Shown piece by piece: positions 1 to 31,633 of a stretch of DNA of 38,277 nucleotides (position 1 is its first letter; the number at the start of each line of letters is the position of its first letter). Source of the DNA: Octopus bimaculoides (lineage: Eukaryota); NCBI RefSeq assembly GCF_001194135.2, contig NC_068994.1, forward strand, positions 44,423,902 to 44,462,178. The letters run 5' to 3'. A program made the translations under genes and the position numbers. The notes below the pieces were generated by a model. It searched no databases, was not told the DNA's origin, and saw only the letters and a program-made list of their open reading frames with translations.

Positions 1-429
1 ATATATATATATATATATGTTTGTATGTATGTATGCATGTGTATGTGTATATATATATATGTATGTGTGTGTATATATATATACATATATATATATACAC
101 ACATACATGAGTGGTATATATGGATTCAGAGAATTGTGTGGCTTTTACAGTAAGCTTTCATATGGACTCAGCTATTAGCCCACATAGTAATTGACTGTGA
201 AGTAAGGTAAAGTAAAGCATCTCTGCAACTGAAAATCCAGAAAATCCAAGTGATAAAATTATTTTGTGAAAAGTATATAAGCATCAAGTTAGTGGGTATA
301 AGAAGTGAATGTATATTTATTTAATCACACTATCTTTCATAGGATTATGAACATTCACAAACTTCTTTACATAGTATTATGAAATTATGCATACATGCTT
401 GCGTTAATATGTATACAATTGTATATATA

Positions 430-790
430 AAAATCAGAATCAAAATCAAAATGGAAATTGTAGTTGTGGCCGATACCAGTGCCACCTGACTGGCACCCAT
501 GATGGTGGCACGTAATAAGCACTATTCAAGCGTGAGTTGATGCCACTGCCACCCGACTGGCTCCCCATGCTGGTGGCATGTAAAAAGCACCATCCAAATA
601 CAGTTAATGCCAGTGCTCTTCAACTGGCTCTCATACCAGTGACTACACTCTCGGAGTGGTTGGCATTAGGAAAGGCATCCAGCTGTAGAAACCTTGCCAG
701 ATTAGATTGGAGCCTAGTGCAGCCTACTGACTTGCCAGTCCTCAGTTAAACCGTCCAACCCATGCCAGCATGGAAAGCGAATGATGATGT
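430..790 (+). mobile_element. 3' end of RTE-type LINE (or derived non-autonomous element) with GAT tail
   Basis: Shares 'ggcattaggaa.ggcatccagctg...ccaacccatgccagcatg.aaag' with copies at 7505 and 9300; ends in gatgatgat; RTE assignment is from recalled family structure. Confidence 0.75.
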
Positions 791-1199
791 GGTGGTGGTG
801 GTTCACAAATCAATGCAAATAAAGAAGATTAGCTCTTCAGATGACCAGAAAATCATGGTTACATCAACAGTTCAACTCTAGATAAACACACAAAATTTAC
901 TTTCATTTAAATAATGAATGGAAGGCTAGAACTGGACAAAATCAATGTAATTTTGCCTACTTCCAACCTTCATCAACAAATGGTAGAAGTTAGCATACTT
1001 CTAGATCAAATGTGTAGTCTAAACATTTCTATCATGTATTAGTCATAAACTCCCCAATGTTGGTTTTTACTAAGAATAATATATATAACTGAATGGCAAA
1101 CAGAATGGATTCTTCTGGTCAAACACTCCCTCAGAAAGAGTTCATACATGGGTTTACATGCTGGTATGGGATGGATATTATTAAATTTAAAGTGTGTCT

Positions 1200-1325
1200 G
1201 TATGCATGTACATATGTATGTGTGTATGTTTGTGTGTGTGTATACACACACACACATACACACATACATACATACATACATACATATATACATACATACA
1301 TACATACATACATGTATGTCTATGT
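1200..1325. repeat. Compound (TG)n/(CA)n/(TACA)n microsatellite
   Basis: Directly visible. Confidence 0.95.
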
Positions 1326-1945
1326 TTATACGTTTACATCAATCATAGTTGTGTAATATAAAAGCATACATCAGTGCCAAGCAACATGCCATCTTAAAGA
1401 TAGCATGTTAGCACCCATATAAAGTAGAAAGATATGTAGTTGTGTGTGTGTTTATGTAAAGTAAACAGAGATTTCATACTTGGACTATGGTTTCATTTGA
1501 TCAACTGATTCACATAACCAGATTTAAAAGTAATAACAATAAGGTTTTAGGTGATGTAACTAGAGCAGGTCATTGTTTGTTATCCGTCACACACCAAAGG
1601 TATGATTCTATAACCCTATAACAGCTCAGAGTCAAATATTAATTTCAAATTCTCTTTTTAATGTTAATATTAGAGATTTGAGCAAGGTTTTATAGGCAGA
1701 AAGATCATAAGTAATTTCACAATGTTTCGACTGTTACTTCTCAATATCTTCCACTTTTAATATCACATGAGTTACAATAAATGTGTGATTATTAAAAGCA
1801 TGAATTTGTTTTCAGACAAAAAGAATATAGGACATACACACACATACACACATATACTTTAATATAAATTACCTGTCCTTATCTTGAAGTGTCTATTTTC
1901 CTTTGCCATTGGCATGTGTGTATATATATATATATATATTATATA

Positions 1946-1997
<52 letters not shown>

Positions 1998-2686
1998 GGT
2001 TCAATTCTGGCTGGGGTCAGCTCATCATTTTTCAGTCAATTGTTTATATATAAATGTCACATTAAATTGGAGTGTATATATATATTATTATTATTATGAT
2101 ATCTCATTACACAGTTATTATTGTACTAATAAACTTCCATAATCACTCTATCTCCATAACTTACAAAGTCTTCTGGTTCGTTTACAAATGTTATATGTAG
2201 TATTGGATAGTTAAAGAATATATTCATAAAATTTGGCTGAAATTGAAGGATGAGCATTTTGCCCAATCAGATGTGCAAGGAGCCATGTAAGCGTTGATTT
2301 GTGGTTTCGATTCTGACTAGGGTTAGCTCATCATTTTTCAGTCAATTGTTTATATATGTATAGAATAAAGCTATAATCATTCCTCAGGTGTGTAAGAGAG
2401 AGTAATGACATACACACACAGGTGTTGTTATGATAACCAGTCTGCTTCCTGTGGGTTTTTTTTCTATTGTTTAATGAACAAAATCTACATGAAACAGACT
2501 GTATTATATATTATAATATATATGCAATACATATATATATACATATATATATACTATATATACACAATCATATATATACATATATAAAATATATACATAC
2601 TACATATACACACAATACACACATGTATTATATAAATATTAGACAAGTGTGCATGTGCCTGTAAATGAATAGATAGATAGATAGCT

Positions 2687-2922
2687 AAAGGCGGTGAACT
2701 GGCAGACTCATTAGCACGCCAGGTGAAATGCTTAGCTGTATTTTGTCTGCCACTATGTTCTGAGTTCAAATTCCGCCAAGGACAACTTTGCCTTTCATCC
2801 TTTTGCCGTCGATTAAATAAGTGCCAGTTATGCACTGGGGTCAATATAATCGACTTAATCCGTTTGTCTGTCCTTGTTTGTCCCCTCTGCATATAGCCCC
2901 TTGTGAGCAGTAAAGAAACAAG
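2687..2922 (+). mobile_element. tRNA-derived SINE, family B
   Basis: Head aaggcggtgaactggcagactc (A-box-like), gagttcaaattcc (B-box), body gcctttcatcc...aagtgccagtt..actggggtc; homologous to 12556, 17808 and 20451. Confidence 0.85.
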
Positions 2923-2946
2923 ATAGATAGATAGATAGACACACAC

Positions 2947-2989
<43 letters not shown>

Positions 2990-3023
2990 CACACACAGAT
3001 AGATAGATAGATAGATAAATAGA
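2922..3023. repeat. (GATA)n microsatellite with two GACACACACA interruptions
   Basis: Directly visible. Confidence 0.95.
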
Positions 3024-3382
3024 TTTGGAAGAACTAACAAGAGAAAGAGCACTCAATAAATATTGTAGAGTTGATATTAGTGTTTTCAGAACTGATGATT
3101 CATATAGGCAGCAAGAGTGTGAATCATCAGCTTTAAATGAATGCGTACATATATGTGTGTGTTTGTATAATATATATCATAACATACATATATATAAAGA
3201 TGGGGCACGATAAAGTGTGACACACAACTAAAATTGGATTCAGTAGTCTCTATTATTATGTAATTATTTCGGCCATTTGATGAAACACGTATATGGCACA
3301 TAGAGCTTTGACTACCACACTTGTTTTCCGTATCTGTGCATGTGTGTGTGTGAGAGTGTATATATTTATATATATACACATG

Positions 3383-3427
<45 letters not shown>

Positions 3428-3857
3428 NNNNNNNNNNNNNNNNNNNNNNNNNNNNNNNNNNNNNNNNNNNNNNNNNNNNNNNNNNNNNNNNNNNNNNNNN
3501 NNNNNNNNNNNNNNNNNNNNNNNNNNNNNNNNNNNNNNNNNNNNNNNNNNNNNNNNNNNNNNNNNNNNNNNNNNNNNNNNNNNNNNNNNNNNNNNNNNNN
3601 NNNNNNNNNNNNNNNNNNNNNNNNNNNNNNNNNNNNNNNNNNNNNNNNNNNNNNNNNNNNNNNNNNNNNNNNNNNNNNNNNNNNNNNNNNNNNNNNNNNN
3701 NNNNNNNNNNNNNNNNNNNNNNNNNNNNNNNNNNNNNNNNNNNNNNNNNNNNNNNNNNNNNNNNNNNNNNNNNNNNNNNNNNNNNNNNNNNNNNNNNNNN
3801 NNNNNNNNNNNNNNNNNNNNNNNNNNNNNNNNNTATACATACATACATACATACGTA

Positions 3858-4017
3858 TACAACAGGTTTCTTTCAGTTTCAATCTACCAAACCCACTTAA
3901 GGCTTTGATTGGTTAGAGGATATAGAAGAAAACACTTGTCCAAGGTGCTATGCGGTTGGACTGAACCCAGAACCATGTGGCTGGAAAGCAAGTTCCTTAC
4001 CACAAAGCCCTCTCTGC
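3858..4017 (-). mobile_element. tRNA-derived SINE family A (CORE-like), 5' half
   Basis: Reverse complement reads gtggtaaggaacttgc...ggttctgggttcagtcc...gcaccttggacaagtgttttc; homologous to 17327-17727. Confidence 0.85.
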
Positions 4018-12350: not shown

Positions 12351-12896
12351 CCCTTTTGAGTTCAATCTGCTTGGGACCACCCAGTTTTTATGATAGAAAA
12401 CTATTCATTTTAAAGTATTTGTATGAAGAACTTCTTGTTAACCTTTTTCTTACCATATTTCTCTTCAAACACATGACCTTCGTGTCAATTTATTTTGAAA
12501 ATTATGAAGAACTTGGTAAAATAACTTTGTCATTAACACACTGGTGTCTGGTATAAAGGCAGTGAGATGGCAGAATCGTTAGCATGCTTGGCAAAATGCT
12601 TGGCAGCATTTCATCCATCTTTACAATTTGAGTTCAAATTCCACTGAAGTCAACATTACCTTTCATCCTTTCAAGGTTAATGAAATAAGTACCAGTTGAA
12701 CACTGGGGTCAGAGTAATTGACTGGTCTCTTCCCACAGAATTTCAGGCCTTGTGCATATAGCTGGAAGGATTAAGCTGGTGTCTAGTACAAATTAACATG
12801 AGATTTTAATGGACAGTTTTAATTTAGGTCACTTCAAAACAGAAAGTTTGTATCATAAAATGAGGGATGGCCTTGGGTGGATTGGTATCAAAAGAG
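12351..12896. mobile_element. piggyBac-like non-autonomous DNA element (MITE), composite, interrupted by a SINE
   Basis: TTAA at 12347-12350 and 12897-12900; ends cccttttgag / tcaaaagag; 12351-12430 is an inverted copy of 12815-12896; internal TTAA-CCTTTT start at 12438; homolog at 15595. Confidence 0.7.
12556..12775 (+). mobile_element. SINE family B, full length, with 15-bp TSD
   Basis: Flanked by ctggtgtctggtata (12541-12555) and ctggtgtctagtaca (12776-12790). Confidence 0.88.
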
Positions 12897-20450: not shown

Positions 20451-20665
20451 TTTTCTACTCTGAACACAAGCCCCAAAATTTGGGGGGGAGGGGGGCAGTC
20501 GATTAGATCGACTCCAGTACGCAACTGGTACTTAATTTATCGACCCCAAAAGGATGAAAGGCAAAGTCGACCTCTGCAGAATTCGAACTCAGAACATCAA
20601 GACAGATGAAATACCGCGAAGTATTTGGCCCGGTGTGCTAATGAATCTGCCAGCTCACAGCCTTT
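20451..20665 (-). mobile_element. SINE family B, full length, CpG-retaining (relatively young)
   Basis: Reverse complement: aaaggctgtgagctggcagattcattagcacaccgggcc...gagttcgaattc...gtcgactttgcctttcatcc. Confidence 0.9.
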
Positions 20666-20973
20666 ATAGATAACACATAGTACTAAAACCTCCTAAATCN
20701 NNNNNNNNNNNNNNNNNNNNNNNNNNNNNNNNNNNNNNNNNNNNNNNNNNNNNNNNNNNNNNNNNNNNNNNNNNNNNNNNNNNNNNNNNNNNNNNNNNNN
20801 NNNNNNNNNNNNNNNNNNNNNNNNNNNNNNNNNNNNNNNNNNNNNNNNNNNNNNNNNNNNNNNNNNNNNNNNNNNNNNNNNNNNNNNNNNNNNNNNNNNN
20901 NNNNNNNNNNNNNNNNNNNNNNNNNNNNNNNNNNNNNNNNNNNNNNNNNNNNNNNNNNNNTATTTATCAGAAT

Positions 20974-21031
20974 ATTGGGCTGATGAGTCGGAATAGATTA
21001 ATATCTTAACCGCGAAACGTTCGTATCCAAT
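20974..21031 (+). ncRNA. Type I hammerhead ribozyme motif
   Basis: Stem I ATTGGG/TCCAAT; core CTGATGA (20980-20986); stem II G-C closed (20987/21013) with CGG/CCG and AGAT/ATCT helices; GAAA (21014-21017); stem III AC-gttc-GT; cleavage triplet GTA (after 21025). Confidence 0.8.
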
Positions 21032-22017
21032 TAACTAAAGGCAGGTTTGTTTTTGCTTTTCACTCTGGTTTTTTGTTCTATGTGTGCCATAAATATCGCC
21101 ATCCATTTAGAGAAAAATTTGTAGTTTAGAATCAGTAGTTCTTTGACTGCTATTTCTAGATTTCCAGTATGTTGGAGAAGCAACTCAATGCTAATCCCTG
21201 TACATTTATGATGATATATATATATATATATGTGTGCATGTATGCACCTTTGTAAATGTACATATATGTACATGTGTGGCGATGGGCACTCACACACACA
21301 CACATGCATACACACATATCTGTACAAGCTTCATCTATAATGTACAATTACTGTACCTTAGTAAAGAATGATTATCTAATGTACATTCCAATAACTTTGG
21401 TAATTATATTAGGCCTAATTAGTTTGATATTTACTTCTTCTAAACTCGCATCCAAGAAAACACAAGTAGCTTACTGGCTACCTGCTGTTAGCTGCAATTA
21501 ATTACATTTTTGAGAGTAGGAATTCTGGAATGCATTGGTAATACACCATAATGCTAGTCCGAACAATTTTTGTGTCATAATGATATCTGTTATTTTCTAT
21601 GTTTCAAGCTATCTTTATTATGATGCAGGATAACTCTACATTCTACAGTATAGAGAAGCAGTTTTCATCAATTAGAAACAGGTGAATCTCTATCTCTAGA
21701 ACAAATAAAAAAAAAGTGCATGGGTACTATTTGATAACTATATCCCCTGGGTTAAATGGTTTATTTGCAGCTTTCTTTAACAAAAATATCAAGGTAAGAA
21801 ATTTGAAGAAAGCTATACAAATTTCGGGTTAGTTTTATGACAGTAATGATAGATTTTGCTAATATTATTATCAATTCATCAAAATCTATAAAATTTTTTT
21901 TTTTTTAAATGGGGCTGTTTGCAGCAAAAATATTTTTTAGCAATGGAAATAAATGCAAGTGAAAGAAATATTTGGTATGTATATATGTGTTTATATATGC
22001 ATACATGCATGTGTGTG

Positions 22018-22051
<34 letters not shown>

Positions 22052-22228
22052 GCTATATATATGTGTATGTGTGCATACATATAAATACATATATATGTTT
22101 GTATGTGTATATATATATATATATATATAATTGTGTGTGTGTGTGTGTGTGTGTGCATGCGTGTGATGTTAACATTTGTTGTATATTGGGGTAGGTCAGC
22201 TTTTTTAGCAACAGGTTGTGACTCTTAC

Positions 22229-22358
22229 CTTGTGTACATTCAATGGAAACCTCTCTGCTTCCTCTTCCCCTCCTGATGAGGGCTACAGTCGATGACACGG
22301 AGAATTTCCATTTTTTATTCCGTCCCTCATCTGACCAGAACTTAATTCCATCATTATC
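22229..22358 (-). CDS. Candidate exon of an unidentified gene (coding or 5' UTR)
   Basis: Acceptor cgtttctcttgcaag|, donor CAAG|gtaaga; 130 nt with one open frame DNDGIKFWSDEGRNKKWKFSVSSTVALIRRGRGSREVSIECTQ; no recognised homology. Confidence 0.3.
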
Positions 22359-23301
22359 CTTGCAAGAGAAACGTGTGTTGAACCATTAAATAATTAGTCC
22401 AGATACACCCGAAAAGCTCGAGGTCAAACGCACTTTGTTGTAACTTATTAGATGCACACAGTGTTACACAAACCTACTTGACAATCCTCTTCAAAGTGAA
22501 GGTCATCAGTTACGACTAAAATCTTACATAGCAACATTAACTACTTCCTGGATTTAAGTGAACGGATTAAGTCAAAAAAAAATTTTTCATTACATACAGA
22601 AATATCATCGTTGTCACGCTTAAATCGGTGGAACATCCTGCATAAACAAAAATGGTGATACTCCCTCAATATTACGTTACTTGCAATTTTTTTTTTCTTT
22701 TTCCCCAGAATGGTTTCATGGGAATTTTTTGCTTTGTTTATTTATTTACTTATTTATTTATTTATATATTTATTACTTGCAATTATTTTTTTTTTTTTTT
22801 TTAAATAAAATTTGTGTACCCTTATAACAATAAGACCCAAGTCACAAGAATATTCTTGCATAACAATATTGATTAAAGCAAGAATTGGCAACCTTTTCTA
22901 ATTATAAGCAATTTTTTTTTTTTTTTTTACATCTAATTAACCACAAGACCATTTATAACATACAATACAATTTACTTGATCTTCCCCTCATAAAATAGAC
23001 ACACCATTTGTATTGAATTCTGAATAGATCTTTAATAAATTCATGTTTTGTGTAAAAGCAATGCATGAGCTAATATATAAATGTGTGTGTGTGTGTGTGT
23101 TGGTCAGAGAGAGAGAGAGAGAGAGAAAGGAAATAGAGTGTGTATGTCAGAGAAAGTGTGTGAGTTTTGGTGTGTGTGTGTGTGAGAGAGAGAAAATGTG
23201 AGATATATACACAAGTATATATATTTATAAATATTATAACTACGTAAACTACAAATACAATATATCTAATTATATGTATGTATATATGTATATATATATC
23301 G

Positions 23302-23334
<33 letters not shown>

Positions 23335-23549
23335 TATATATACATATATATATAGAGAGAGATATATGTATGTATGTGCGTATATGTATCTGCATTCCCA
23401 CTTATACGCACGTAGTTTAATACGCATTTATGTACATACTCTGCAAATGCATATATGTACATATATNNNNNNNNNNNNNNNNNNNNNNNNNNNNNNNNNN
23501 NNNNNNNNNNNNNNNNNNNNNNNNNNNNNNNNNNNNNNNNNNNNNNNNN

Positions 23550-23612
<63 letters not shown>

Positions 23613-23656
23613 CAAACATACATAAATAACACTATGTAATTATATATATGCATATC

Positions 23657-23697
<41 letters not shown>

Positions 23698-24692
23698 CGC
23701 ACCTACATACATGCACACACAAACACACACACTTACACGCAAACATGCTCATATCCCAACATTGATATATGAATCAATTATAAAAATCTATGGAGATTTA
23801 AATACACACACACACACACACACATACATCATCCTCAGCATCATCATCATCATCATAAAAGATTATATATAAGTATATATATATATGCGTATATGCATAT
23901 GTATTGAAATATATTTAGTTCTGCTCACAAGGCTACGTAATTATGACTTGAATAGAAATCAGATATAGAAATTTTAAAAAAATAGGAAGAATTTCTAAAA
24001 ATTTCGCTGAACCCAATCATAAAAATTATCTTGGCTACATGAAGCAAATTTGACACAGATTACAAGAAAACTGCTGCCAGCAAATCTAGCCAGAAGCAGG
24101 AGTTCTCCCTAAGTCACTGCACTTCACATTGAGCAACATATTATTACTAAAGCAAGTATGTGTGAACCTCATTATTCCCTTGTTAAGGGGTAAAGACATT
24201 GACGAAAATCAATTCAGTTGAATACGATAGCTGGAAAAGCATCAGATCTATGAAGCACTGGCACACCAATCCTGCCCAGTCAGCAGGTCGCATCAGAGAA
24301 CAACACATTTTTATTGAAAACATGCCAAGATATTGAAGAGAGAGAGAGAGGATGAGGATATTTGAGGATTTACAATCTACAGCTAGTTGGTTTCTCTATC
24401 CATTTTCATAAACGCAAAAACAAATTAATTCTGATTCTAATTGCAAAGCATCTGATGTCAAGGTTGTGAGTCCAAATTCAGAGAAAGCAGAAAAAAAAAA
24501 ACGTAATAACAGATAAAAATGAAAATAAAAAAAAACATATAATTTCTTATATATTCATATATTTTTTTTTAAATTGTCTTCCCTTTTGTCAATACTATTG
24601 AATTATACAAGAAGAGGGAGAAATCTGCATGTGCATATATGTGTGTGTGTGTGCATGTATGTGTGTATGTGTGTATATATTATATGTATATG

Positions 24693-24728
<36 letters not shown>

Positions 24729-25210
24729 GGGAAAGGAGGTGAGGAAGAAAAGACCTTTAATGTCGTTTGCAAACTGCAATATATGAACATACATAAATAT
24801 ACCAAAAGATATTAAATCAAATGCTAAAAAAAAAAAAAATGAAAGACGCTNNNNNNNNNNNNNNNNNNNNNNNNNNNNNNNNNNNNNNNNNNNNNNNNNN
24901 NNNNNNNNNNNNNNNNNNNNNNNNNNNNNNNNNNNNNNNNNNNNNNNNNNNNNNNNNNNNNNNNNNNNNNNNNNNNNNNNNNNNNNNNNNNNNNNNNNNN
25001 NNNNNNNNNNNNNNNNNNNNNNNNNNNNNNNNNNNNNNNNNNNNNNNNNNNNNNNNNNNNNNNNNNNNNNNNNNNNNNNNNNNNNNNNNNNNNNNNNNNN
25101 NNNNNNNNNNNNNNNNNNNNNNNNNNNNNNNNNNNNNNNNNNNNNNNNNNNNNNNNNNNNNNNNNNNNNNNNNNNNNNNNNNNNNNNNNNNNNNNNNNNN
25201 NNNNNNNNNN

Positions 25211-25256
25211 GTCCTCCTCCTCCTCCTTCTCGTCCTCCTCCTCCTCCTCCTCCTCT
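25211..25256. repeat. (TCC)n repeat at gap edge
   Basis: Directly visible. Confidence 0.9.
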
Positions 25257-25487
25257 TGCAATGTATTCTAATTCATTAGTATCAGAGAAGGATAACTACA
25301 ACTACTCCAACCAGGGATAAAACTGTTGCTTTGATACAACCATACCACTTACAGAGAGAGAAATGCTTTCTCTTGTTAGGTTTTTAAAGCAGCTTGGGTT
25401 GATGAAGAATATAATGATATAATGTAATATATACACATACATAGGTCTAGATATACTTAAACAGATAGATAGATAGATAGATAGATA

Positions 25488-25522
<35 letters not shown>

Positions 25523-26514
25523 GTGCGCGCACGTATGTGTCNNNNNNNNNNNNNNNNNNNNNNNNNNNNNNNNNNNNNNNNNNNNNNNNNNNNNNNNNNN
25601 NNNNNNNNNNNNNNNNNNNNNNNNNNNNNNNNNNNNNNNNNNNNNNNNNNNNNNNNNNNNNNNNNNNNNNNNNNNNNNNNNNNNNNNNNNNNNNNNNNNN
25701 NNNNNNNNNNNNNNNNNNNNNNNNNNNNNNNNNNNNNNNNNNNNNNNNNNNNNNNNNNNNNNNNNNNNNNNNNNNNNNNNNNNNNNNNNNNNNNNNNNNN
25801 NNNNNNNNNNNNNNNNNNNNNNNNNNNNNNNNNNNNNNNNNNNNNNNNNNNNNNNNNNNNNNNNNNNNNNNNNNNNNNNNNNNNNNNNNNNNNNNNNNNN
25901 NNNNNNNNNNNNNNNNNNNNNNNNNNNNNNNNNNNNNNNNNNNNNNNNNNNNNNNNNNNNNNNNNNNNNNNNNNNNNNNNNNNNNNNNNNNNNNNNNNNN
26001 NNNNNNNNNNNNNNNNNNNNNNNNNNNNNNNNNNNNNNNNNNNNNNNNNNNNNNNNNNNNNNNNNNNNNNNNNNNNNNNNNNNNNNNNNNNNNNNNNNNN
26101 NNNNNNNNNNNNNNNNNNNNNNNNNNNNNNNNNNNNNNNNNNNNNNNNNNNNNNNNNNNNNNNNNNNNNNNNNNNNNNNNNNNNNNNNNNNNNNNNNNNN
26201 NNNNNNNNNNNNNNNNNNNNNNNNNNNNNNNNNNNNNNNNNNNNNNNNNNNNNNNNNNNNNNNNNNNNNNNNNNNNNNNNNNNNNNNNNNNNNNNNNNNN
26301 NNNNNNNNNNNNNNNNNNNNNNNNNNNNNNNNNNNNNNNNNNNNNNNNNNNNNNNNNNNNNNNNNNNNNNNNNNNNNNNNNNNNNNNNNNNNNNNNNNNN
26401 NNNNNNNNNNNNNNNNNNNNNNNNNNATATATATGTATATGGGTAGATAGATTGATAGAGAGAGAAAAATATATATATATATGAATACATATACATATAT
26501 ATTCAGTATTATAG

Positions 26515-26554
<40 letters not shown>

Positions 26555-28055
26555 GTGCGCGCACGTATGTGTCTGTGTATCTATATTTATATAATTATAT
26601 ACGCACATATGTATCAACATATACATACATTCATACATTTGATATATGTATATACATATAGTGTCTCCATTAAATGCATATACAAACATATACATATATG
26701 CGTATATACATACATAAATGCACGCAGTTATATATAGATAGATAGATATATAGACATACACAAACACACTTATATTAACAAAGTTACAAACATACTATGC
26801 ATTCATAACCTTTAATATAAATATGCATATACACGCACATGTAAATTTACAGATATATGTATATATGTATGTATATATATGTATATGAGTGTATGTGTTT
26901 TGTGTGTGCCGAACACACATACACCACACATGCATATACATGCGCACACACATATATATACACACACACATACACATATAGAAATATACTCATAGATATA
27001 TATACATATAGATATATGTATGTGTATATATATATATATATCATATATATGCTTTATGCATTCATATTTATGTACATAAAGATGTGCATCCATGCATGCT
27101 TGCATGTATACACGCACACATTTGCATATACCCATATACCACGCGCATATTTATATTTACACATATAGAAATATATTTATTGTATATGTCTGTGCATTTG
27201 AGCATATAATTTCTATACACGTTCATGTAGACGTTCATACGTGCGTGTGTATGTATGTGTGCATGTATATAAAGATGTGCACTCACACACACATAGACAC
27301 ACACACAAGTGTGTACATGCATACACACACACATGGATATACATACATGCGCGTATGCATGCATGAAGACACACAGCTACTAAATTTTAGCATGGTTTTT
27401 CTAAAGGTCTTGTTGAATAACATTCGGACATGTTATAGTATAGATTTTCTTCCTCCTTATACCCATAAATATACGTACATAAAAGATATATATACATATA
27501 TATAGAGAGAGAGATAGATGGATAGATAGATAGATAGATATACATTCACACATACATACATACATACATACATAAATGAATACATTTATACATATGTATA
27601 TACATATGTACATTATCACAGATATATATATATACACATATAGAAGGGGTGAAAAAAAATTTCTACAGCGAAGATGCAACCAGGCTTCTCTCTCTTTCTA
27701 TGCATTTCTCTTTGTACGTCTCCCCTTCTCCTTTCATTTACTGCTAGCCCACCCCACTGCTACTAAGCACCCATGACCTACCTACCTATCAACCAACCAT
27801 CTACCCAACAATCAACCACTGCAGCCATTACATTCATTCTTTTTTCTTCCTTTTTTTCTTTCTTTCTTCCTTTTTTTCTTTCTTTCTTTCTTTTTTTTTT
27901 TTTCTTTTCTCTTTCCTCACTAGTAACAATTTTTTTCTTTTCACACAGCTGATCATCGGGAAGAAAGAGATTCTGAAGGAAAATAAATACAGGGTGGATG
28001 GAGGGAGGAAAACAATCACACACACACACACAAAGATTACACATAAAAAAAAATT

Positions 28056-28066
<11 letters not shown>

Positions 28067-28086
<20 letters not shown>

Positions 28087-28108
28087 TAATAATAATAATA
28101 ATAATGAT
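28067..28108. repeat. (AAT)n microsatellite
   Basis: Directly visible. Confidence 0.95.
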
Positions 28109-28709
28109 AATGAAAGAAAGCAATGAGAAGAAGGAAAATATGAGGGGAGGGGGAGACGAAGCGAGTTTAAATTCCCAGATAAACAGTTCTACACATCCAT
28201 CTTCAGCCTCCTCACTGNNNNNNNNNNNNNNNNNNNNNNNNNNNNNNNNNNNNNNNNNNNNNNNNNNNNNNNNNNNNNNNNNNNNNNNNNNNNNNNNNNN
28301 NNNNNNNNNNNNNNNNNNNNNNNNNNNNNNNNNNNNNNNNNNNNNNNNNNNNNNNNNNNNNNNNNNNNNNNNNNNNNNNNNNNNNNNNNNNNNNNNNNNN
28401 NNNNNNNNNNNNNNNNNNNNNNNNNNNNNNNNNNNNNNNNNNNNNNNNNNNNNNNNNNNNNNNNNNNNNNNNNNNNNNNNNNNNNNNNNNNNNNNNNNNN
28501 NNNNNNNNNNNNNNNNNNNNNNNNNNNNNNNNNNNNNNNNNNNNNNNNNNNNNNNNNNNNNNNNNNNNNNNNNNNNNNNNNNNNNNNNNNNNNNNNNNNN
28601 NNNNNNNNNNNNNNNNNNNNNNNNNNNNNNNNNNNNNNNNNNNNNNNNNNNNNNNNNNNNNNNNNNNNNNNNNNNNNNNNNNNNNNNNNNNNNNNNNNNN
28701 NNNNNNNNN

Positions 28710-28751
<42 letters not shown>

Positions 28752-29400
28752 CATACACACACATATATATATATATAAATATATACCCACATATATATAT
28801 ATTATGCAAATATTGTTTTCATGGAAGAGAAACAGAAATTCCATGTTGTAACAGATTCAACCAAATCTCTGTCGATATCCACTTCCCATCTTGTTCAAGC
28901 TCACCACCAACACTAGCACCACTACTACCATCATCATCTCCACAACTCTCTCTTTCTCTTTCTCTCTCTCTCTCTCTCTCTCCCTCTCTTTCTGTAACTC
29001 TCTTTGTATCTTTTCTTTCACTACCATCTCTCTCCATTTTGGCCACACCATCTTTTAGTTGATTTCATTTTCTCTCTCACGTTTCAACACTTGCTGCATC
29101 TTCTTTCCATCCATCCGTCCATCCATCCATCCATCCATCCATTCCTAGCAGCATCTTAACGTTATCTTGTCATTGATGTAGATCTATCCATTGTATTTAT
29201 TTACTTGTCCATCAATCTATCCGTGTATGAACGTGAATGTGTGTATGAGTGCATGCTTGTGTGCATGTATATGCATGATGCGTGCATGTATGCGTATGTG
29301 CATATGTGTGTGTGTGTGTACGTGTATGTGCATCCCCTTCTTCACATCCATAGAAACACGTGTGTGTGTATGTGTGTGTATACATATTTATATATGTATA

Positions 29401-29465
<65 letters not shown>

Positions 29466-29586
29466 TTATATTGGTAGGTATTGGTATAGATAAATCTAAA
29501 GGTGTGTATAGAAATATGTATAAAGGTATATATTCACAGCTATAGACCTCCCCAACGCAGGCAATACACAACGCACACAGACACAA

Positions 29587-29624
<38 letters not shown>

Positions 29625-29823
29625 TCATACAGATAATACAGTAGTGTAGAATAGAATAGAGTAGAGTAGAGTACAGTACAGTACGATGTGGAAAGAGAAG
29701 CCTTGGATTTTTCATATTAGTATTTTAAATTCCGTAGAAGAGAAAAATGGCAACATCAACAACAACAACAACAGGAAAAAAACACACAAAAAAATACTTA
29801 CAAAAAAAAAAAATCCTACTTAC

Positions 29824-29985
29824 TTCTACTGTTTCATCCATTGCTATCTGCTGTGACTGAGGATAAATATCCTGTGCTAGAATCCTATAGTAGCTACTGC
29901 CGTATTGTGACAACTGCATTATGTAGATGGGTTTCTGCCGCTTGTGAATAAATGTTAACCTGCTACTCCAGCAACTATTCTCTGC
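29824..29985 (-). CDS. Candidate exon of an unidentified gene
   Basis: Donor GAA|gtaagt at 29823; 54 open codons ending ...MQLSQYGSSYYRILAQDIYPQSQQIAMDETVE; 5' boundary uncertain; no recognised homology. Confidence 0.25.
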
Positions 29986-30100
29986 CTATACATCTGGTTG
30001 TCTGTGCCTAGGTCCGAGTGGTAGTTAGCTTTGGTCTGTGTTCTTGTGGAGCTTGTATCATTGTGTCTGTGTGTTGGAGGAAGCTCATGTGACTGTGTCA

Positions 30101-30141
<41 letters not shown>

Positions 30142-30275
30142 TTTGTATATGTGTTTGTATATATGTGTGTGGTTGTATGTATGTGTGTCCATGAGCGAGA
30201 GAGCATAAGTGCATATGTGTATGAGTGTGTATATATACATACATATATATGTATATGTGTGTGTGTGTGCACGCG

Positions 30276-30312
<37 letters not shown>

Positions 30313-30809
30313 ATATGTATAAATGTAGGAAAGAATCTATATGTCTTTGGTTATTTGTGTGTGTATGCGTGTGTGTTTGGCTATATGTATATGGTGCAAA
30401 TATTAGAGAGTAAACTTATGTGATTATATTTTTTTAATATGTGTGTATATGTGTGTGTATGTGTACATATGCGTGTATGTGTGTATGTCTGTGTATTAAT
30501 GAGCTCATGTGACTGTGTGTTCTAGAAAAAAAAAGCCTATATGATTCTGTCTGCACAGTAGAGAGCCTGAGTGCATCTATTGGTGCACTAGTGAAGCCCA
30601 TGTGTAGATGTAAATATGTTTATATGAGTGTGTATGTATATGTGTGTGTGTGTGTCTTTTTGTGTATCTGTATGTATGTGTTCATGTGTACATGGATGAG
30701 CATCTGTTTATGTGTATGTGCGTGTGTGTGTGTGTTAATGAAAAAGCTTTTGTGCTTGTATGATGTTAAGCTTGCAGTGCTGTCAATCTGCACTAGCAAG
30801 CTTACATTG

Positions 30810-30862
<53 letters not shown>

Positions 30863-31633
30863 GCTCTTTCTCCTTCTTTCCCCCCTCTCTCTATCCCTTA
30901 CTCTCTCTCACACACTCTTTCTGTCACATCATCATCATCTATCTCTCTTTCTCTCTCTCTCTCTCTCACACACACACACNNNNNNNNNNNNNNNNNNNNN
31001 NNNNNNNNNNNNNNNNNNNNNNNNNNNNNNNNNNNNNNNNNNNNNNNNNNNNNNNNNNNNNNNNNNNNNNNNNNNNNNNNNNNNNNNNNNNNNNNNNNNN
31101 NNNNNNNNNNNNNNNNNNNNNNNNNNNNNNNNNNNNNNNNNNNNNNNNNNNNNNNNNNNNNNNNNNNNNNNNNNNNNNNNNNNNNNNNNNNNNNNNNNNN
31201 NNNNNNNNNNNNNNNNNNNNNNNNNNNNNNNNNNNNNNNNNNNNNNNNNNNNNNNNNNNNNNNNNNNNNNNNNNNNNNNNNNNNNNNNNNNNNNNNNNNN
31301 NNNNNNNNNNNNNNNNNNNNNNNNNNNNNNNNNNNNNNNNNNNNNNNNNNNNNNNNNNNNNNNNNNNNNNNNNNNNNNNNNNNNNNNNNNNNNNNNNNNN
31401 NNNNNNNNNNNNNNNNNNNNNNNNNNNNNNNNNNNNNNNNNNNNNNNNNNNNNNNNNNNNNNNNNNNNNNNNNNNNNNNNNNNNNNNNNNNNNNNNNNNN
31501 NNNNNNNNNNNNNNNNNNNNNNNNNNNNNNNNNNNNNNNNNNNNNNNNNNNNNNNNNNNNNNNNNNNNNNNNNNNNNNNNNNNNNNNNNNNNNNNNNNNN
31601 NNNNNNNNNNNNNNTGTGTGTATGTGTATATAC

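What the first reader, a model, noticed from the sequence alone, without database searches (positions are those of the whole stretch)
20961..21040. Complete type I hammerhead ribozyme with a dimer-type palindromic stem III at a gap edge
Seen: every conserved core base is present in order (C3-U4-G5-A6-U7-G8-A9, G10.1-C11.1, G12-A13-A14, A15.1-U16.1, A17). Stem I has 6 bp, stem II is long and bulged with a UAAU loop, and stem III ACG-TT-CGT is an inverted repeat that folds poorly as a monomer but pairs 3+3 bp between two copies. Established: minimal type I hammerheads with short palindromic stem III occur in Penelope-like element terminal repeats, retrozymes and newt satellite 2, and can act as double hammerheads. 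Inference: this is the end of a Penelope/retrozyme-like unit, and the 261-nt gap immediately upstream may hide the rest of it or a tandem partner. The motif holds 5 CpGs in a CpG-poor background, suggesting youth or constraint. It could also cleave a host pre-mRNA transcribed on the + strand.
Basis: partly seen in the sequence, partly recalled or inferred. Interest (0 to 1): 0.88.

Follow-up and report, generated by a model that had tools for sequence, protein, structure and literature searches.

The report
Retroelement-borne minimal hammerhead ribozyme copy
The motif is a real hammerhead self-cleaving RNA motif, but it is one copy of a repeat present about a thousand times in this animal genome, of the kind already known from Penelope-like retroelements and retrozymes, so it is a sound but ordinary find.

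Summary
At 20974-21031 (+) there is a complete type I hammerhead: a 6-bp stem I, CUGAUGA, a long helix II, GAAA, a short helix III (ACG-UU-CGU), and a GUA cleavage triplet (cut expected between 21025 and 21026). It lies 13 nt from a 261-N gap. My descriptor finds it once in the window and in 0 of 1000 strict shuffles (7 of 1000 relaxed). Rfam Hammerhead_1 scores only 17.2 bits, below its cut-off of 34.

The motif is not a single-copy element. Reads show that 20961-21215 belongs to a dispersed repeat. About 100 copies carry this exact ribozyme version, roughly 500-900 carry a variant, and about 4000 carry the 3' part.

Across the family the catalytic core and helix III show no variant at 3% or more. 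The free position N7 and helix II vary heavily, yet helix II keeps its fold.

As a monomer, helix III cannot close and the ribozyme fold loses to a competing fold. This fits the dimer-dependent "minimal" hammerheads of Penelope-like elements and retrozymes.

The window holds no RT/GIY-YIG ORF, no second copy and no tandem partner. Reads show no excess of RNA ends at the cut site, and the unique flank is almost untranscribed. Verdict: a new member of a known kind; low interest.

The parts
20700..20960 (.). Assembly gap (261 N) immediately upstream of the repeat copy. It sits between two high-copy repeats, which probably caused the assembly break.
   Evidence: read depths
20961..21215 (+). This copy of the dispersed repeat that carries the hammerhead. 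It is cut at its 5' side by the gap, and it leaves the family consensus at 21216.
   Evidence: Depth at >=90% identity in run X22, where single-copy DNA is about 1x: about 105 at 20970-21005, about 910 at 21024-32, and about 3900 at 21141-49. The family consensus continues AATGGTTTTACCGATAAAGG after 21215 and TACCGTGAATTTTTTTAGAGACACTTTCAA before 20962.
20974..20979 (+). Stem I, 5' strand (AUUGGG, positions 2.6-2.1)
20980..20986 (+). Core box C3-U4-G5-A6-U7-G8-A9
   Evidence: In the family only N7 (20984) varies, T>A in about 75%.
20987..21013 (+). Helix II: G10.1-C11.1, bulged U20988, CGG/CCG, internal loop AAU/UAA, AGAU/AUCU, loop UAAU
   Evidence: folds on its own, -5.0 kcal/mol. Family variants keep the same architecture with other sequences.
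21014..21017 (+). Core G12-A13-A14 and A15.1
   Evidence: no family variant at 3% or more
21017..21024 (+). Helix III, ACG-UU-CGU (15.1-15.3, two U, 16.3-16.1). It cannot close as a 3-bp hairpin. It pairs 3+3 bp between two copies.
   Evidence: hairpin forbidden; duplex -6.6 kcal/mol; the stems are invariant in the family although they hold two CpGs
21025..21026 (+). A17 and U1.1. The predicted scissile bond lies between 21025 and 21026 (triplet G16.2-U16.1-A17).
   Evidence: Position follows from standard hammerhead numbering applied. No RNA-end pile-up was seen there.
21026..21031 (+). Stem I, 3' strand (UCCAAU, positions 1.1-1.6)
   Evidence: 21026 T>C in about 30-50% of copies turns G-U into G-C.
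21216..21320 (.). (TA)n/(TG)n microsatellite that replaces the rest of the repeat in this copy. Single-copy DNA starts at about 21325.

Best explanation
The motif is a minimal type I hammerhead ribozyme carried in the sense orientation by a dispersed retroelement-type repeat. The repeat has about 10^3 hammerhead-bearing copies and several thousand 5'-shortened or related copies sharing its 3' part.

The element most likely belongs to the Penelope-like element / non-LTR retrozyme lineage. It is either a pseudo-LTR-derived fragment or a non-autonomous derivative.

In transcripts of master copies, the ribozyme would cut after A17 (21025 in this copy). Helix III is too short to close in a monomer, so two ribozyme copies would have to pair their ACG..CGU segments, or a host factor would have to help. 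That cut would process longer-than-unit element RNA.

Shown here: the motif, its statistical support, its repeat nature, the invariance of the core and helix III, and the variable but structure-preserving helix II across the family.

Inferred: self-cleavage itself, the dimer mechanism, and the Penelope/retrozyme affiliation.

The copy in this window is a solitary fragment, cut off at its 3' side and nearly silent. It probably does nothing for the host.
For: Motif and statistics.

Repeat family and the copy-number gradient rising 5'->3' on the + strand. A 5'-truncation-like gradient puts the element's sense strand on +, the same strand as the ribozyme.

Family constraint (depth 370-890, reads >=80% alike):
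- No substitution at 3% or more at C3, U4, G5, A6, G8, A9, G12, A13, A14, A15.1, 15.2, 15.3, 16.3, 16.2, 16.1 or A17.
- 20 of the 58 motif positions do vary, including N7 (75%).
- The chance that none of the 11 strict core positions varies is 0.005.
- The two helix III CpGs stay invariant, whereas helix II CpGs are changed in 35-80% of copies.

Helix II keeps the plan '3 bp + 3x3 loop + 4-6 bp' in three sequence versions: AGAU/AUCU, AGAGUA/UACUCU and AGGGAA/UUCUCU. These differ by changes on both sides of a pair.

Stem I changes keep pairing: G2.1>A opposite U1.1, and U1.1>C opposite G2.1.

The monomer cannot form helix III, while the duplex gives -6.6 kcal/mol.

The architecture matches published PLE min-HHR traits: a long helix II, an unpaired base at its 5' base, palindromic 15.2-16.2, and dimer dependence (PMC4209133). 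Published work also places HHRs in pLTRs, reports a (TA)n insertion bias and describes inverted partial copies (PMC8557442). This copy abuts a (TA)n tract. A few reads in both DNA and RNA show inverted junctions, for example 21020/21106.

Family members are present in RNA runs.
Against: - The Rfam Hammerhead_1 score of 17.2 is below its gathering score of 34. At whole-window scale the hit is not significant.
- No RT/GIY-YIG ORF, no second hammerhead and no second copy are in 38 kb.
- No tandem joints were seen.
- Most family members have U, not C, at 11.1, and U or a deletion at 10.1. Many copies therefore lack the canonical G10.1-C11.1 pair.
- The helix II variants at 20989, 21011, 21012 and 21013 are all CpG transitions. 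Their linkage in single copies was not seen, so the C-G to U-A 'covariation' could be decay.
- RNA reads show no excess of ends at 21025/21026, and the same up/downstream depth ratio as DNA.
- The hammerhead fold is 4.3 kcal/mol worse than the MFE.
- Most copies that contain 21026 onward also keep TCGTA upstream. Copies therefore do not start at the cleavage site, as they would if cleaved RNA were the usual template.
Confidence: 0.62

Rival explanations
1. Non-LTR retrozyme unit. The repeat would be a small (about 300 bp) non-autonomous element arranged in tandem. Its hammerheads would cut multimeric transcripts into monomers that are ligated into circular RNAs. The gap would hide the neighbouring unit.
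For: Type I hammerhead with a weak helix III in AT-rich DNA, as described for metazoan retrozymes (PMC7229834). The family is transcribed. The sequence after 21215 in the family (TACCGATAAAGGTTTTTTT...) faintly resembles the sequence before 20962 (TACCGTGAATTTTTTT...). A U-U pair at the base of helix II, as in most family members here, is reported for an axolotl retrozyme hammerhead (PMC7229834).
Against: Only one hammerhead is in the window. No 'go back' joints appear in DNA or RNA reads. The steep 5'->3' copy-number gradient (100 to 3900) fits dispersed truncated copies better than arrays of whole units. The long helix II without loop-loop contacts is the PLE 'minimal' type rather than the canonical retrozyme type. 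The resemblance between the two ends rests mostly on a T run.
Confidence: 0.2
2. SINE-like hammerhead carrier (like Schistosoma Sm-alpha). This would be a short non-autonomous element with its own head containing the ribozyme. A LINE or PLE partner, whose 3' tail it shares, would mobilise it.
For: The 3' part (from about 21115) is shared with thousands of copies that have a different upstream sequence. For example, 470-870 reads per run read TCAATCTGGAGTAAT... before 21130. That is the pattern of several elements sharing one 3' module. There is no ORF. The surrounding genome is SINE-rich.
Against: No tRNA-like or other pol III head was recognised, although the true 5' end was not reached. The ribozyme architecture is that of PLE min-HHRs.
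Confidence: 0.13
3. A chance or decayed look-alike. The repeat would merely contain hammerhead-like boxes with no ribozyme role, and the invariance would reflect recent common descent.
For: The Rfam score is below threshold. At a relaxed-descriptor rate of 0.007 per 38 kb, a genome of gigabase size would hold hundreds of chance hits. There is no cleavage signature in RNA-seq. Many copies lack G10.1-C11.1.
Against: Family members differ by up to 20% and by many indels in helix II, yet the core and helix III show no variant at 3% or more (P about 0.005). The only variable core position is the free N7. Helix III CpGs survive in a genome with CpG o/e 0.29. Helix II keeps its fold in three sequence versions.
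Confidence: 0.05

Closest known systems
Minimal hammerheads (min-HHR) in the pseudo-LTRs of Penelope-like elements (Cervera & de la Pena 2014, PMC4209133)
   Same: Type I topology. The full core is present. Helix II is longer than the canonical 4 bp, with an unpaired base at its 5' base. Stem I is open, with no defined loop 1. Helix III is very short, with self-complementary 15.2-16.2 (CG..CG), so a dimer is needed. There are hundreds to thousands of heterogeneous copies per genome falling into consensus families. Most copies are solitary.
   Different: The unpaired base follows G10.1 rather than lying between A9 and G10.1. Helix II is interrupted by a 3x3 internal loop. Most family members have U at 11.1. 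No RT/GIY-YIG ORF or second flanking repeat was found next to this copy, so the PLE link is not shown.
Metazoan non-LTR retrozymes and newt/axolotl satellite 2 hammerheads (PMC7229834; bioRxiv 10.64898/2026.07.22.740005)
   Same: Type I hammerhead in AT-rich repeated DNA. Helix III is weak and favours double-hammerhead cleavage. The family is transcribed. A U-U at the base of helix II is known in one axolotl family. Retrozymes are proposed to derive from PLE pseudo-LTRs.
   Different: No tandem array was seen here. Helix II is long rather than 4 bp. No loop 1-loop 2 contacts are evident. No circular junctions were detected.
Rfam RF00163 Hammerhead_1
   Same: Aligns over the whole model (1-45) with every core position matching.
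   Different: Scores 17.2 bits against a gathering score of 34. Helix II has 23 nt between its closing pairs where the model has 10, and stem I has a different sequence.
Schistosoma Sm-alpha SINE-like hammerhead elements
   Same: A high-copy, short, non-coding dispersed repeat carrying a type I hammerhead.
   Different: Sm-alpha carries a canonical hammerhead active as a monomer and a pol III-type head. Neither is shown here.

Membership tests
Hammerhead ribozyme, type I | Conserved core C3 U4 G5 A6 N7 G8 A9 / G12 A13 A14 / A15.1-U16.1 / H17, in order | tested here: met
Hammerhead ribozyme, type I | Three helices around the core, with helix I open-ended | tested here: met
   Stem I is 6 bp. 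Helix II is 1+3+4 bp. Helix III forms only as 2 bp with a GUUC loop, or as a 3+3 bp duplex between two copies.
Hammerhead ribozyme, type I | Rfam RF00163 gathering score (34 bits) | tested here: not met
   17.2 bits, E=0.12 on 201 nt; no hit at gathering level
Hammerhead ribozyme, type I | Mg-dependent self-cleavage 3' of position 17 | not testable with these tools
   The only indirect test was RNA-seq. It shows no pile-up of read ends at 21025/21026 and no RNA/DNA depth asymmetry. Standard RNA-seq has little power here.
Hammerhead ribozyme, type I | Hammerhead fold is the preferred fold of the monomer | tested here: not met
   HHR fold -6.0 against MFE -10.3 kcal/mol; z-score of the 80-nt region is -0.77
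PLE minimal hammerhead (PMC4209133) | Helix II longer than canonical, with an unpaired nucleotide at its 5' base | tested here: met
   8 bp in all, with bulged U20988 directly after G10.1. The position differs by one from the published 9/10.1 insert.
PLE minimal hammerhead (PMC4209133) | Conserved G10.1-C11.1 | tested here: inconclusive
   Present in this copy and in its >=90% sub-family. At >=80% identity, 72-82% of copies have T at 21013 and about 75% lack G at 20987.
PLE minimal hammerhead (PMC4209133) | Self-complementary 15.2-16.2 / loop 3, allowing a dimeric helix III | tested here: met
   ACG..CGU; duplex -6.6 kcal/mol, and -6.7 for the commoner ACGUCGU variant
PLE minimal hammerhead (PMC4209133) | Large heterogeneous consensus families with compensatory changes | tested here: inconclusive
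   Several hundred copies and at least 3 helix II versions that keep the fold. Only pile-ups and a few contig ends were available, not copy-by-copy alignments.
PLE minimal hammerhead (PMC4209133) | Located in direct repeats (pLTRs) flanking an RT + GIY-YIG ORF | tested here: not met
   There is no ORF of that kind and no second repeat copy in the window. The flanks are a SINE-like repeat and single-copy DNA. Solitary copies are the rule for PLE hammerheads, and the gap is unread, so this does not exclude descent from a PLE.
Non-LTR retrozyme (PMC7229834) | Head-to-tail tandem repeats of 150-450 bp, each with a hammerhead | tested here: not met
   One hammerhead in 38 kb; no 'go back' joints. 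The 261-N gap leaves room for one more unit.
Non-LTR retrozyme (PMC7229834) | Expression as circular RNA | not tested
   The unit ends are unknown, so a back-splice-type junction could not be searched for.

The most novel reading that the evidence does not exclude
The family may be a previously undescribed hammerhead-bearing SINE-like or retrozyme element of this (probably cephalopod) genome. In this reading the ribozyme head is grafted onto a 3' module shared with thousands of other repeats, and most members work with a non-canonical U-U (or A-U) 10.1-11.1 base of helix II. That would make it a natural test case for how much of the 'invariant' G10.1-C11.1 pair a dimeric hammerhead needs.
Probability: 0.15. 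Interest if true: 0.4.

Novelty: new member of a known kind. Interest (0 to 1): 0.22.

Why it matters
It adds one more lineage to the long list of animal genomes whose repeats carry minimal, dimer-dependent hammerheads. The family-level read pile-ups also give a clean picture of constraint on the catalytic core and helix III. It does not open a new question. Its practical value is for annotation. The repeat explains the assembly gap, and the family could be used to look for Penelope-like elements or retrozymes and their RNAs in this species.

Tried and rejected
- Rfam at gathering level over the window gave nothing. The whole-window E-value scan gave only microsatellite-driven miRNA hits.
- Search for a second copy or partner in the window found none, by blastn with word size 7 and by my own descriptor.
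- ORF listing for RT/GIY-YIG returned only microsatellite or N-filled ORFs.
- I tried to fetch other genomic copies through the only sizeable ORF on the repeat (21031-21327, minus strand). It is not on record and has no homologue.
- A metagenome scan with a helix II/III pattern returned 4 loci from an unrelated repeat without a CUGANGA box.
- No long-read runs (PacBio, Nanopore) were available to read the arrangement of copies.
- Idea rejected: that genomic copies start at the cleavage site because cleaved RNA is the template. The depth step lies at 21021, and the clipped parts carry hammerhead variants.
- Idea rejected: that the locus sits in a well-transcribed host gene.
- ARAGORN found no tRNA-like head anywhere in the window.

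Full report
**What is there.** The + strand at 20974-31031... reads, from 20974 to 21031: ATTGGG CTGATGA G-T-CGG AAT AGAT TAAT ATCT TAA CCG-C GAAA CG TT CG T A TCCAAT. In hammerhead numbering:
- Stem I is 6 bp: AUUGGG/UCCAAU, with G2.1-U1.1.
- The box C3-A9 is present.
- Helix II is made of G10.1-C11.1, a bulged U, three pairs, a 3x3 internal loop, and a 4-bp distal stem closed by UAAU.
- G12-A13-A14 follows.
- Helix III is A15.1-C-G / C-G-U16.1 around two U.
- A17 is at 21025.

The predicted cut lies between 21025 and 21026, in a GUA triplet.

**Is it more than chance?**
- Rfam's Hammerhead_1 model aligns from end to end with all core positions matching. It scores only 17.2 bits against a gathering score of 34, mainly because helix II is long and stem I is unlike the seed sequences.
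- The hit does not appear at gathering level or in a whole-window E-value scan.
- A simple core pattern occurs once, against 0 of 100 shuffles.
- My structural descriptor finds this site and no other on either strand. It hits 7 of 1000 dinucleotide shuffles in relaxed form and 0 of 1000 at the observed stem lengths.

This is significant for a 38-kb window. It would not be significant for a gigabase genome, so the argument has to rest on the family evidence below.

**It is a repeat.** I laid public reads and contigs of the same (coded) organism on the region. The stretch 20961-21215 is multi-copy, and single-copy depth resumes at about 21325.

In run X22 single-copy DNA is at about 1x. At >=90% identity, depth there is:

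| Region | Depth |
|---|---|
| Ribozyme 5' half | about 105 |
| 21024-21032 | about 910 |
| 21141-21149 | about 3900 |

.

- At >=80% identity the ribozyme itself is covered 370-890-fold in three runs.
- The step at 21021 is not a truncation point. The clipped parts of those reads carry other versions of the same ribozyme (...CATACTCTTAACCGTGAAACG|TCGTATCC).
- The family consensus continues upstream of 20962 (TACCGTGAATTTTTTTAGAGACACTTTCAA) and downstream of 21215 (AATGGTTTTACCGATAAAGGTTTTTTTCATACTG). This copy runs instead into a (TA)n/(TG)n microsatellite.
- The steady 5'->3' rise in copy number on the + strand is what 5'-truncated retro-copies give. It puts the ribozyme in the sense orientation of the element.
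- From about 21115 the sequence is shared with a still larger set of repeats that have another upstream part.

**Constraint in the family.** Among reads >=80% alike, 20 of the 58 motif positions show a substitution in at least 3% of reads.
- None of C3, U4, G5, A6, G8, A9, G12, A13, A14, A15.1, 15.2, 15.3, 16.3, 16.2, 16.1 or A17 does.
- The one variable core position is N7 (A in about 75%), the position a hammerhead leaves free.
- The chance that none of the 11 strictly conserved positions falls among 20 variable ones is 0.005.
- The window has a CpG o/e of 0.29. The ribozyme holds 5 CpGs in 58 nt (0.47 expected), while the other 184 nt of the same copy hold one.
- In the family the helix II CpGs are changed in 35-80% of copies, but the two helix III CpGs are untouched.
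- Helix II is full of substitutions and indels, yet three versions fold alone to the same plan of 3 bp, a 3x3 loop and 4-6 bp. These are the window copy, one read from an RNA contig, and one read from DNA contigs and reads. Their distal stems are AGAU/AUCU, AGAGUA/UACUCU and AGGGAA/UUCUCU, which differ by changes on both sides of a pair.
- Stem I changes keep pairing: G2.1 to A opposite U1.1, and U1.1 to C opposite G2.1.

Caveats:
- I saw pile-ups and contig ends, not individual full copies, so linkage of paired changes is not proven.
- The matched 20989 C>T (37-45%) and 21012 G>A (36-40%) are both CpG transitions.
- Most members have U at 11.1 and lack G at 10.1. This copy belongs to a minority (about 100 copies) with the canonical G10.1-C11.1.

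**How it would work.**
- A 3-bp helix III with a 2-nt loop cannot form.
- The best monomeric hammerhead fold (2 bp plus a GUUC loop) is -6.0 kcal/mol, against -10.3 for a competing fold that ties up the core.
- The 80-nt region is not unusually stable (z = -0.77).
- Two copies can pair ACGUUCGU with ACGUUCGU (3+3 bp, -6.6 kcal/mol). The commoner ACGUCGU version does the same (-6.7).

This is the double-hammerhead arrangement described for newt satellite 2, retrozymes and PLE minimal hammerheads. Those are reported to cleave poorly in vitro and only as dimers or with an extended helix III (PMC4209133, PMC7229834). I therefore take the ribozyme to act, if at all, on longer-than-unit or closely paired element transcripts.

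**Tests in RNA.**
- Family members are present in RNA runs.
- Three raw RNA-seq runs show no pile-up of ends at 21025/21026.
- The depth ratio across the site is 4.9-7.5 in RNA, against 7.1-9.7 in DNA under identical settings. There is no sign of cleavage, though ordinary RNA-seq is a weak test.
- The unique flank 21325-21930 drew two laid reads in each of two of the three runs (about 6% of each run was read). This locus is close to silent, and the idea of a host pre-mRNA being cut has no support.

**What kind of element.**
- Nothing in the window codes for RT or GIY-YIG.
- There is no second copy or second hammerhead.
- No tandem joints appear in reads.
- A few reads in both DNA and RNA show the same inverted junctions (for example 21020/21106). 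They amount to well under 1% of depth.

The ribozyme architecture is that of PLE minimal hammerheads: a long helix II with an unpaired base at its foot, an open stem I, and a self-complementary minimal helix III. Solitary copies are the rule for those (PMC4209133). Published work also places HHRs in pLTRs and reports (TA)n target bias and inverted partial copies (PMC8557442). Retrozymes are now argued to be non-autonomous PLE derivatives (bioRxiv 10.64898/2026.07.22.740005).

I could not reach other full copies. The protein-based look-ups found nothing. The metagenome scan hit an unrelated repeat. No long-read runs were served. Affiliation to PLEs is therefore an inference from architecture. 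The retrozyme and SINE-like readings remain open.

**Organism.** It is coded in the tools. The AT-rich, microsatellite- and SINE-laden, CpG-depleted sequence, a 2015 first data set, and an excess of A>G differences in RNA made me think of a coleoid cephalopod. That is a guess, and nothing in the verdict depends on it.

**Verdict.** This is a real, family-conserved minimal type I hammerhead on a dispersed retroelement-type repeat. The copy at hand is a solitary, truncated, nearly silent fragment beside an assembly gap that the repeats themselves probably caused. It is a new member of a well-known kind. Interest is low.

Noticed in passing
window 21060-21215 (family-wide): Under identical settings, RNA runs show A>G at 10-11 places and T>C at 6-9. 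DNA runs show A>G at 4-5 and T>C at 4. RNA-only A>G sites include 21109, 21137, 21166, 21169, 21179, 21188, 21193 and 21194. This looks like A-to-I editing of repeat transcripts from both strands.
   Followed up: partly
window 20477-20668; also 12552-12743 and 2686-2855 (inverted): A very high-copy SINE-like repeat lies directly upstream of the gap (depth in the thousands where single copy is about 1). ARAGORN sees no tRNA in it. Together with the hammerhead repeat it probably caused the assembly break.
   Followed up: partly
family variants of 21016-21045: A sub-family reads TCTCTAAAAAACG-ATTAACTAAAGACTTGT (19 contigs in X2). In it the 3' half of the ribozyme (TCGTATCCA, with the cleavage site and stem I 3' strand) is deleted, so part of the family has lost the ribozyme.
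   Followed up: no
window 21020/21106, 21028/21109, 21030/21113, 20991/21125: Reads switch strand at recurrent coordinates. The 21020/21106 joint appears in both DNA and RNA runs, which points to a few genomic head-to-head copies. They make up well under 1% of depth.
   Followed up: no
runs X22-X24 (not the window): Many clipped read parts and joints carry the palindrome GGTTCGTCCATCGATCGATGGACGAACC. This is evidently a bridge linker of a proximity-ligation library. Joints containing it are artefacts.
   Followed up: yes
whole window: There are eleven N gaps (10-908 nt) and dense (TA)n/(TG)n/(CT)n microsatellites. CpG o/e is 0.29, with TpG and CpA at about 1.4. The microsatellites produce hundreds of sub-threshold Rfam hits to mir-297, mir-466 and mir-3149, which are spurious.
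   Followed up: yes
L001:3952-3971, L002:119-138, L003:621-640, L004:100-119: Four metagenome contigs share CTTAACCGTGAAACGTCGTA inside a conserved repeat of about 150 nt from some other organism. No CUGANGA box lies upstream, so they are unrelated to the hammerhead family here.
   Followed up: partly
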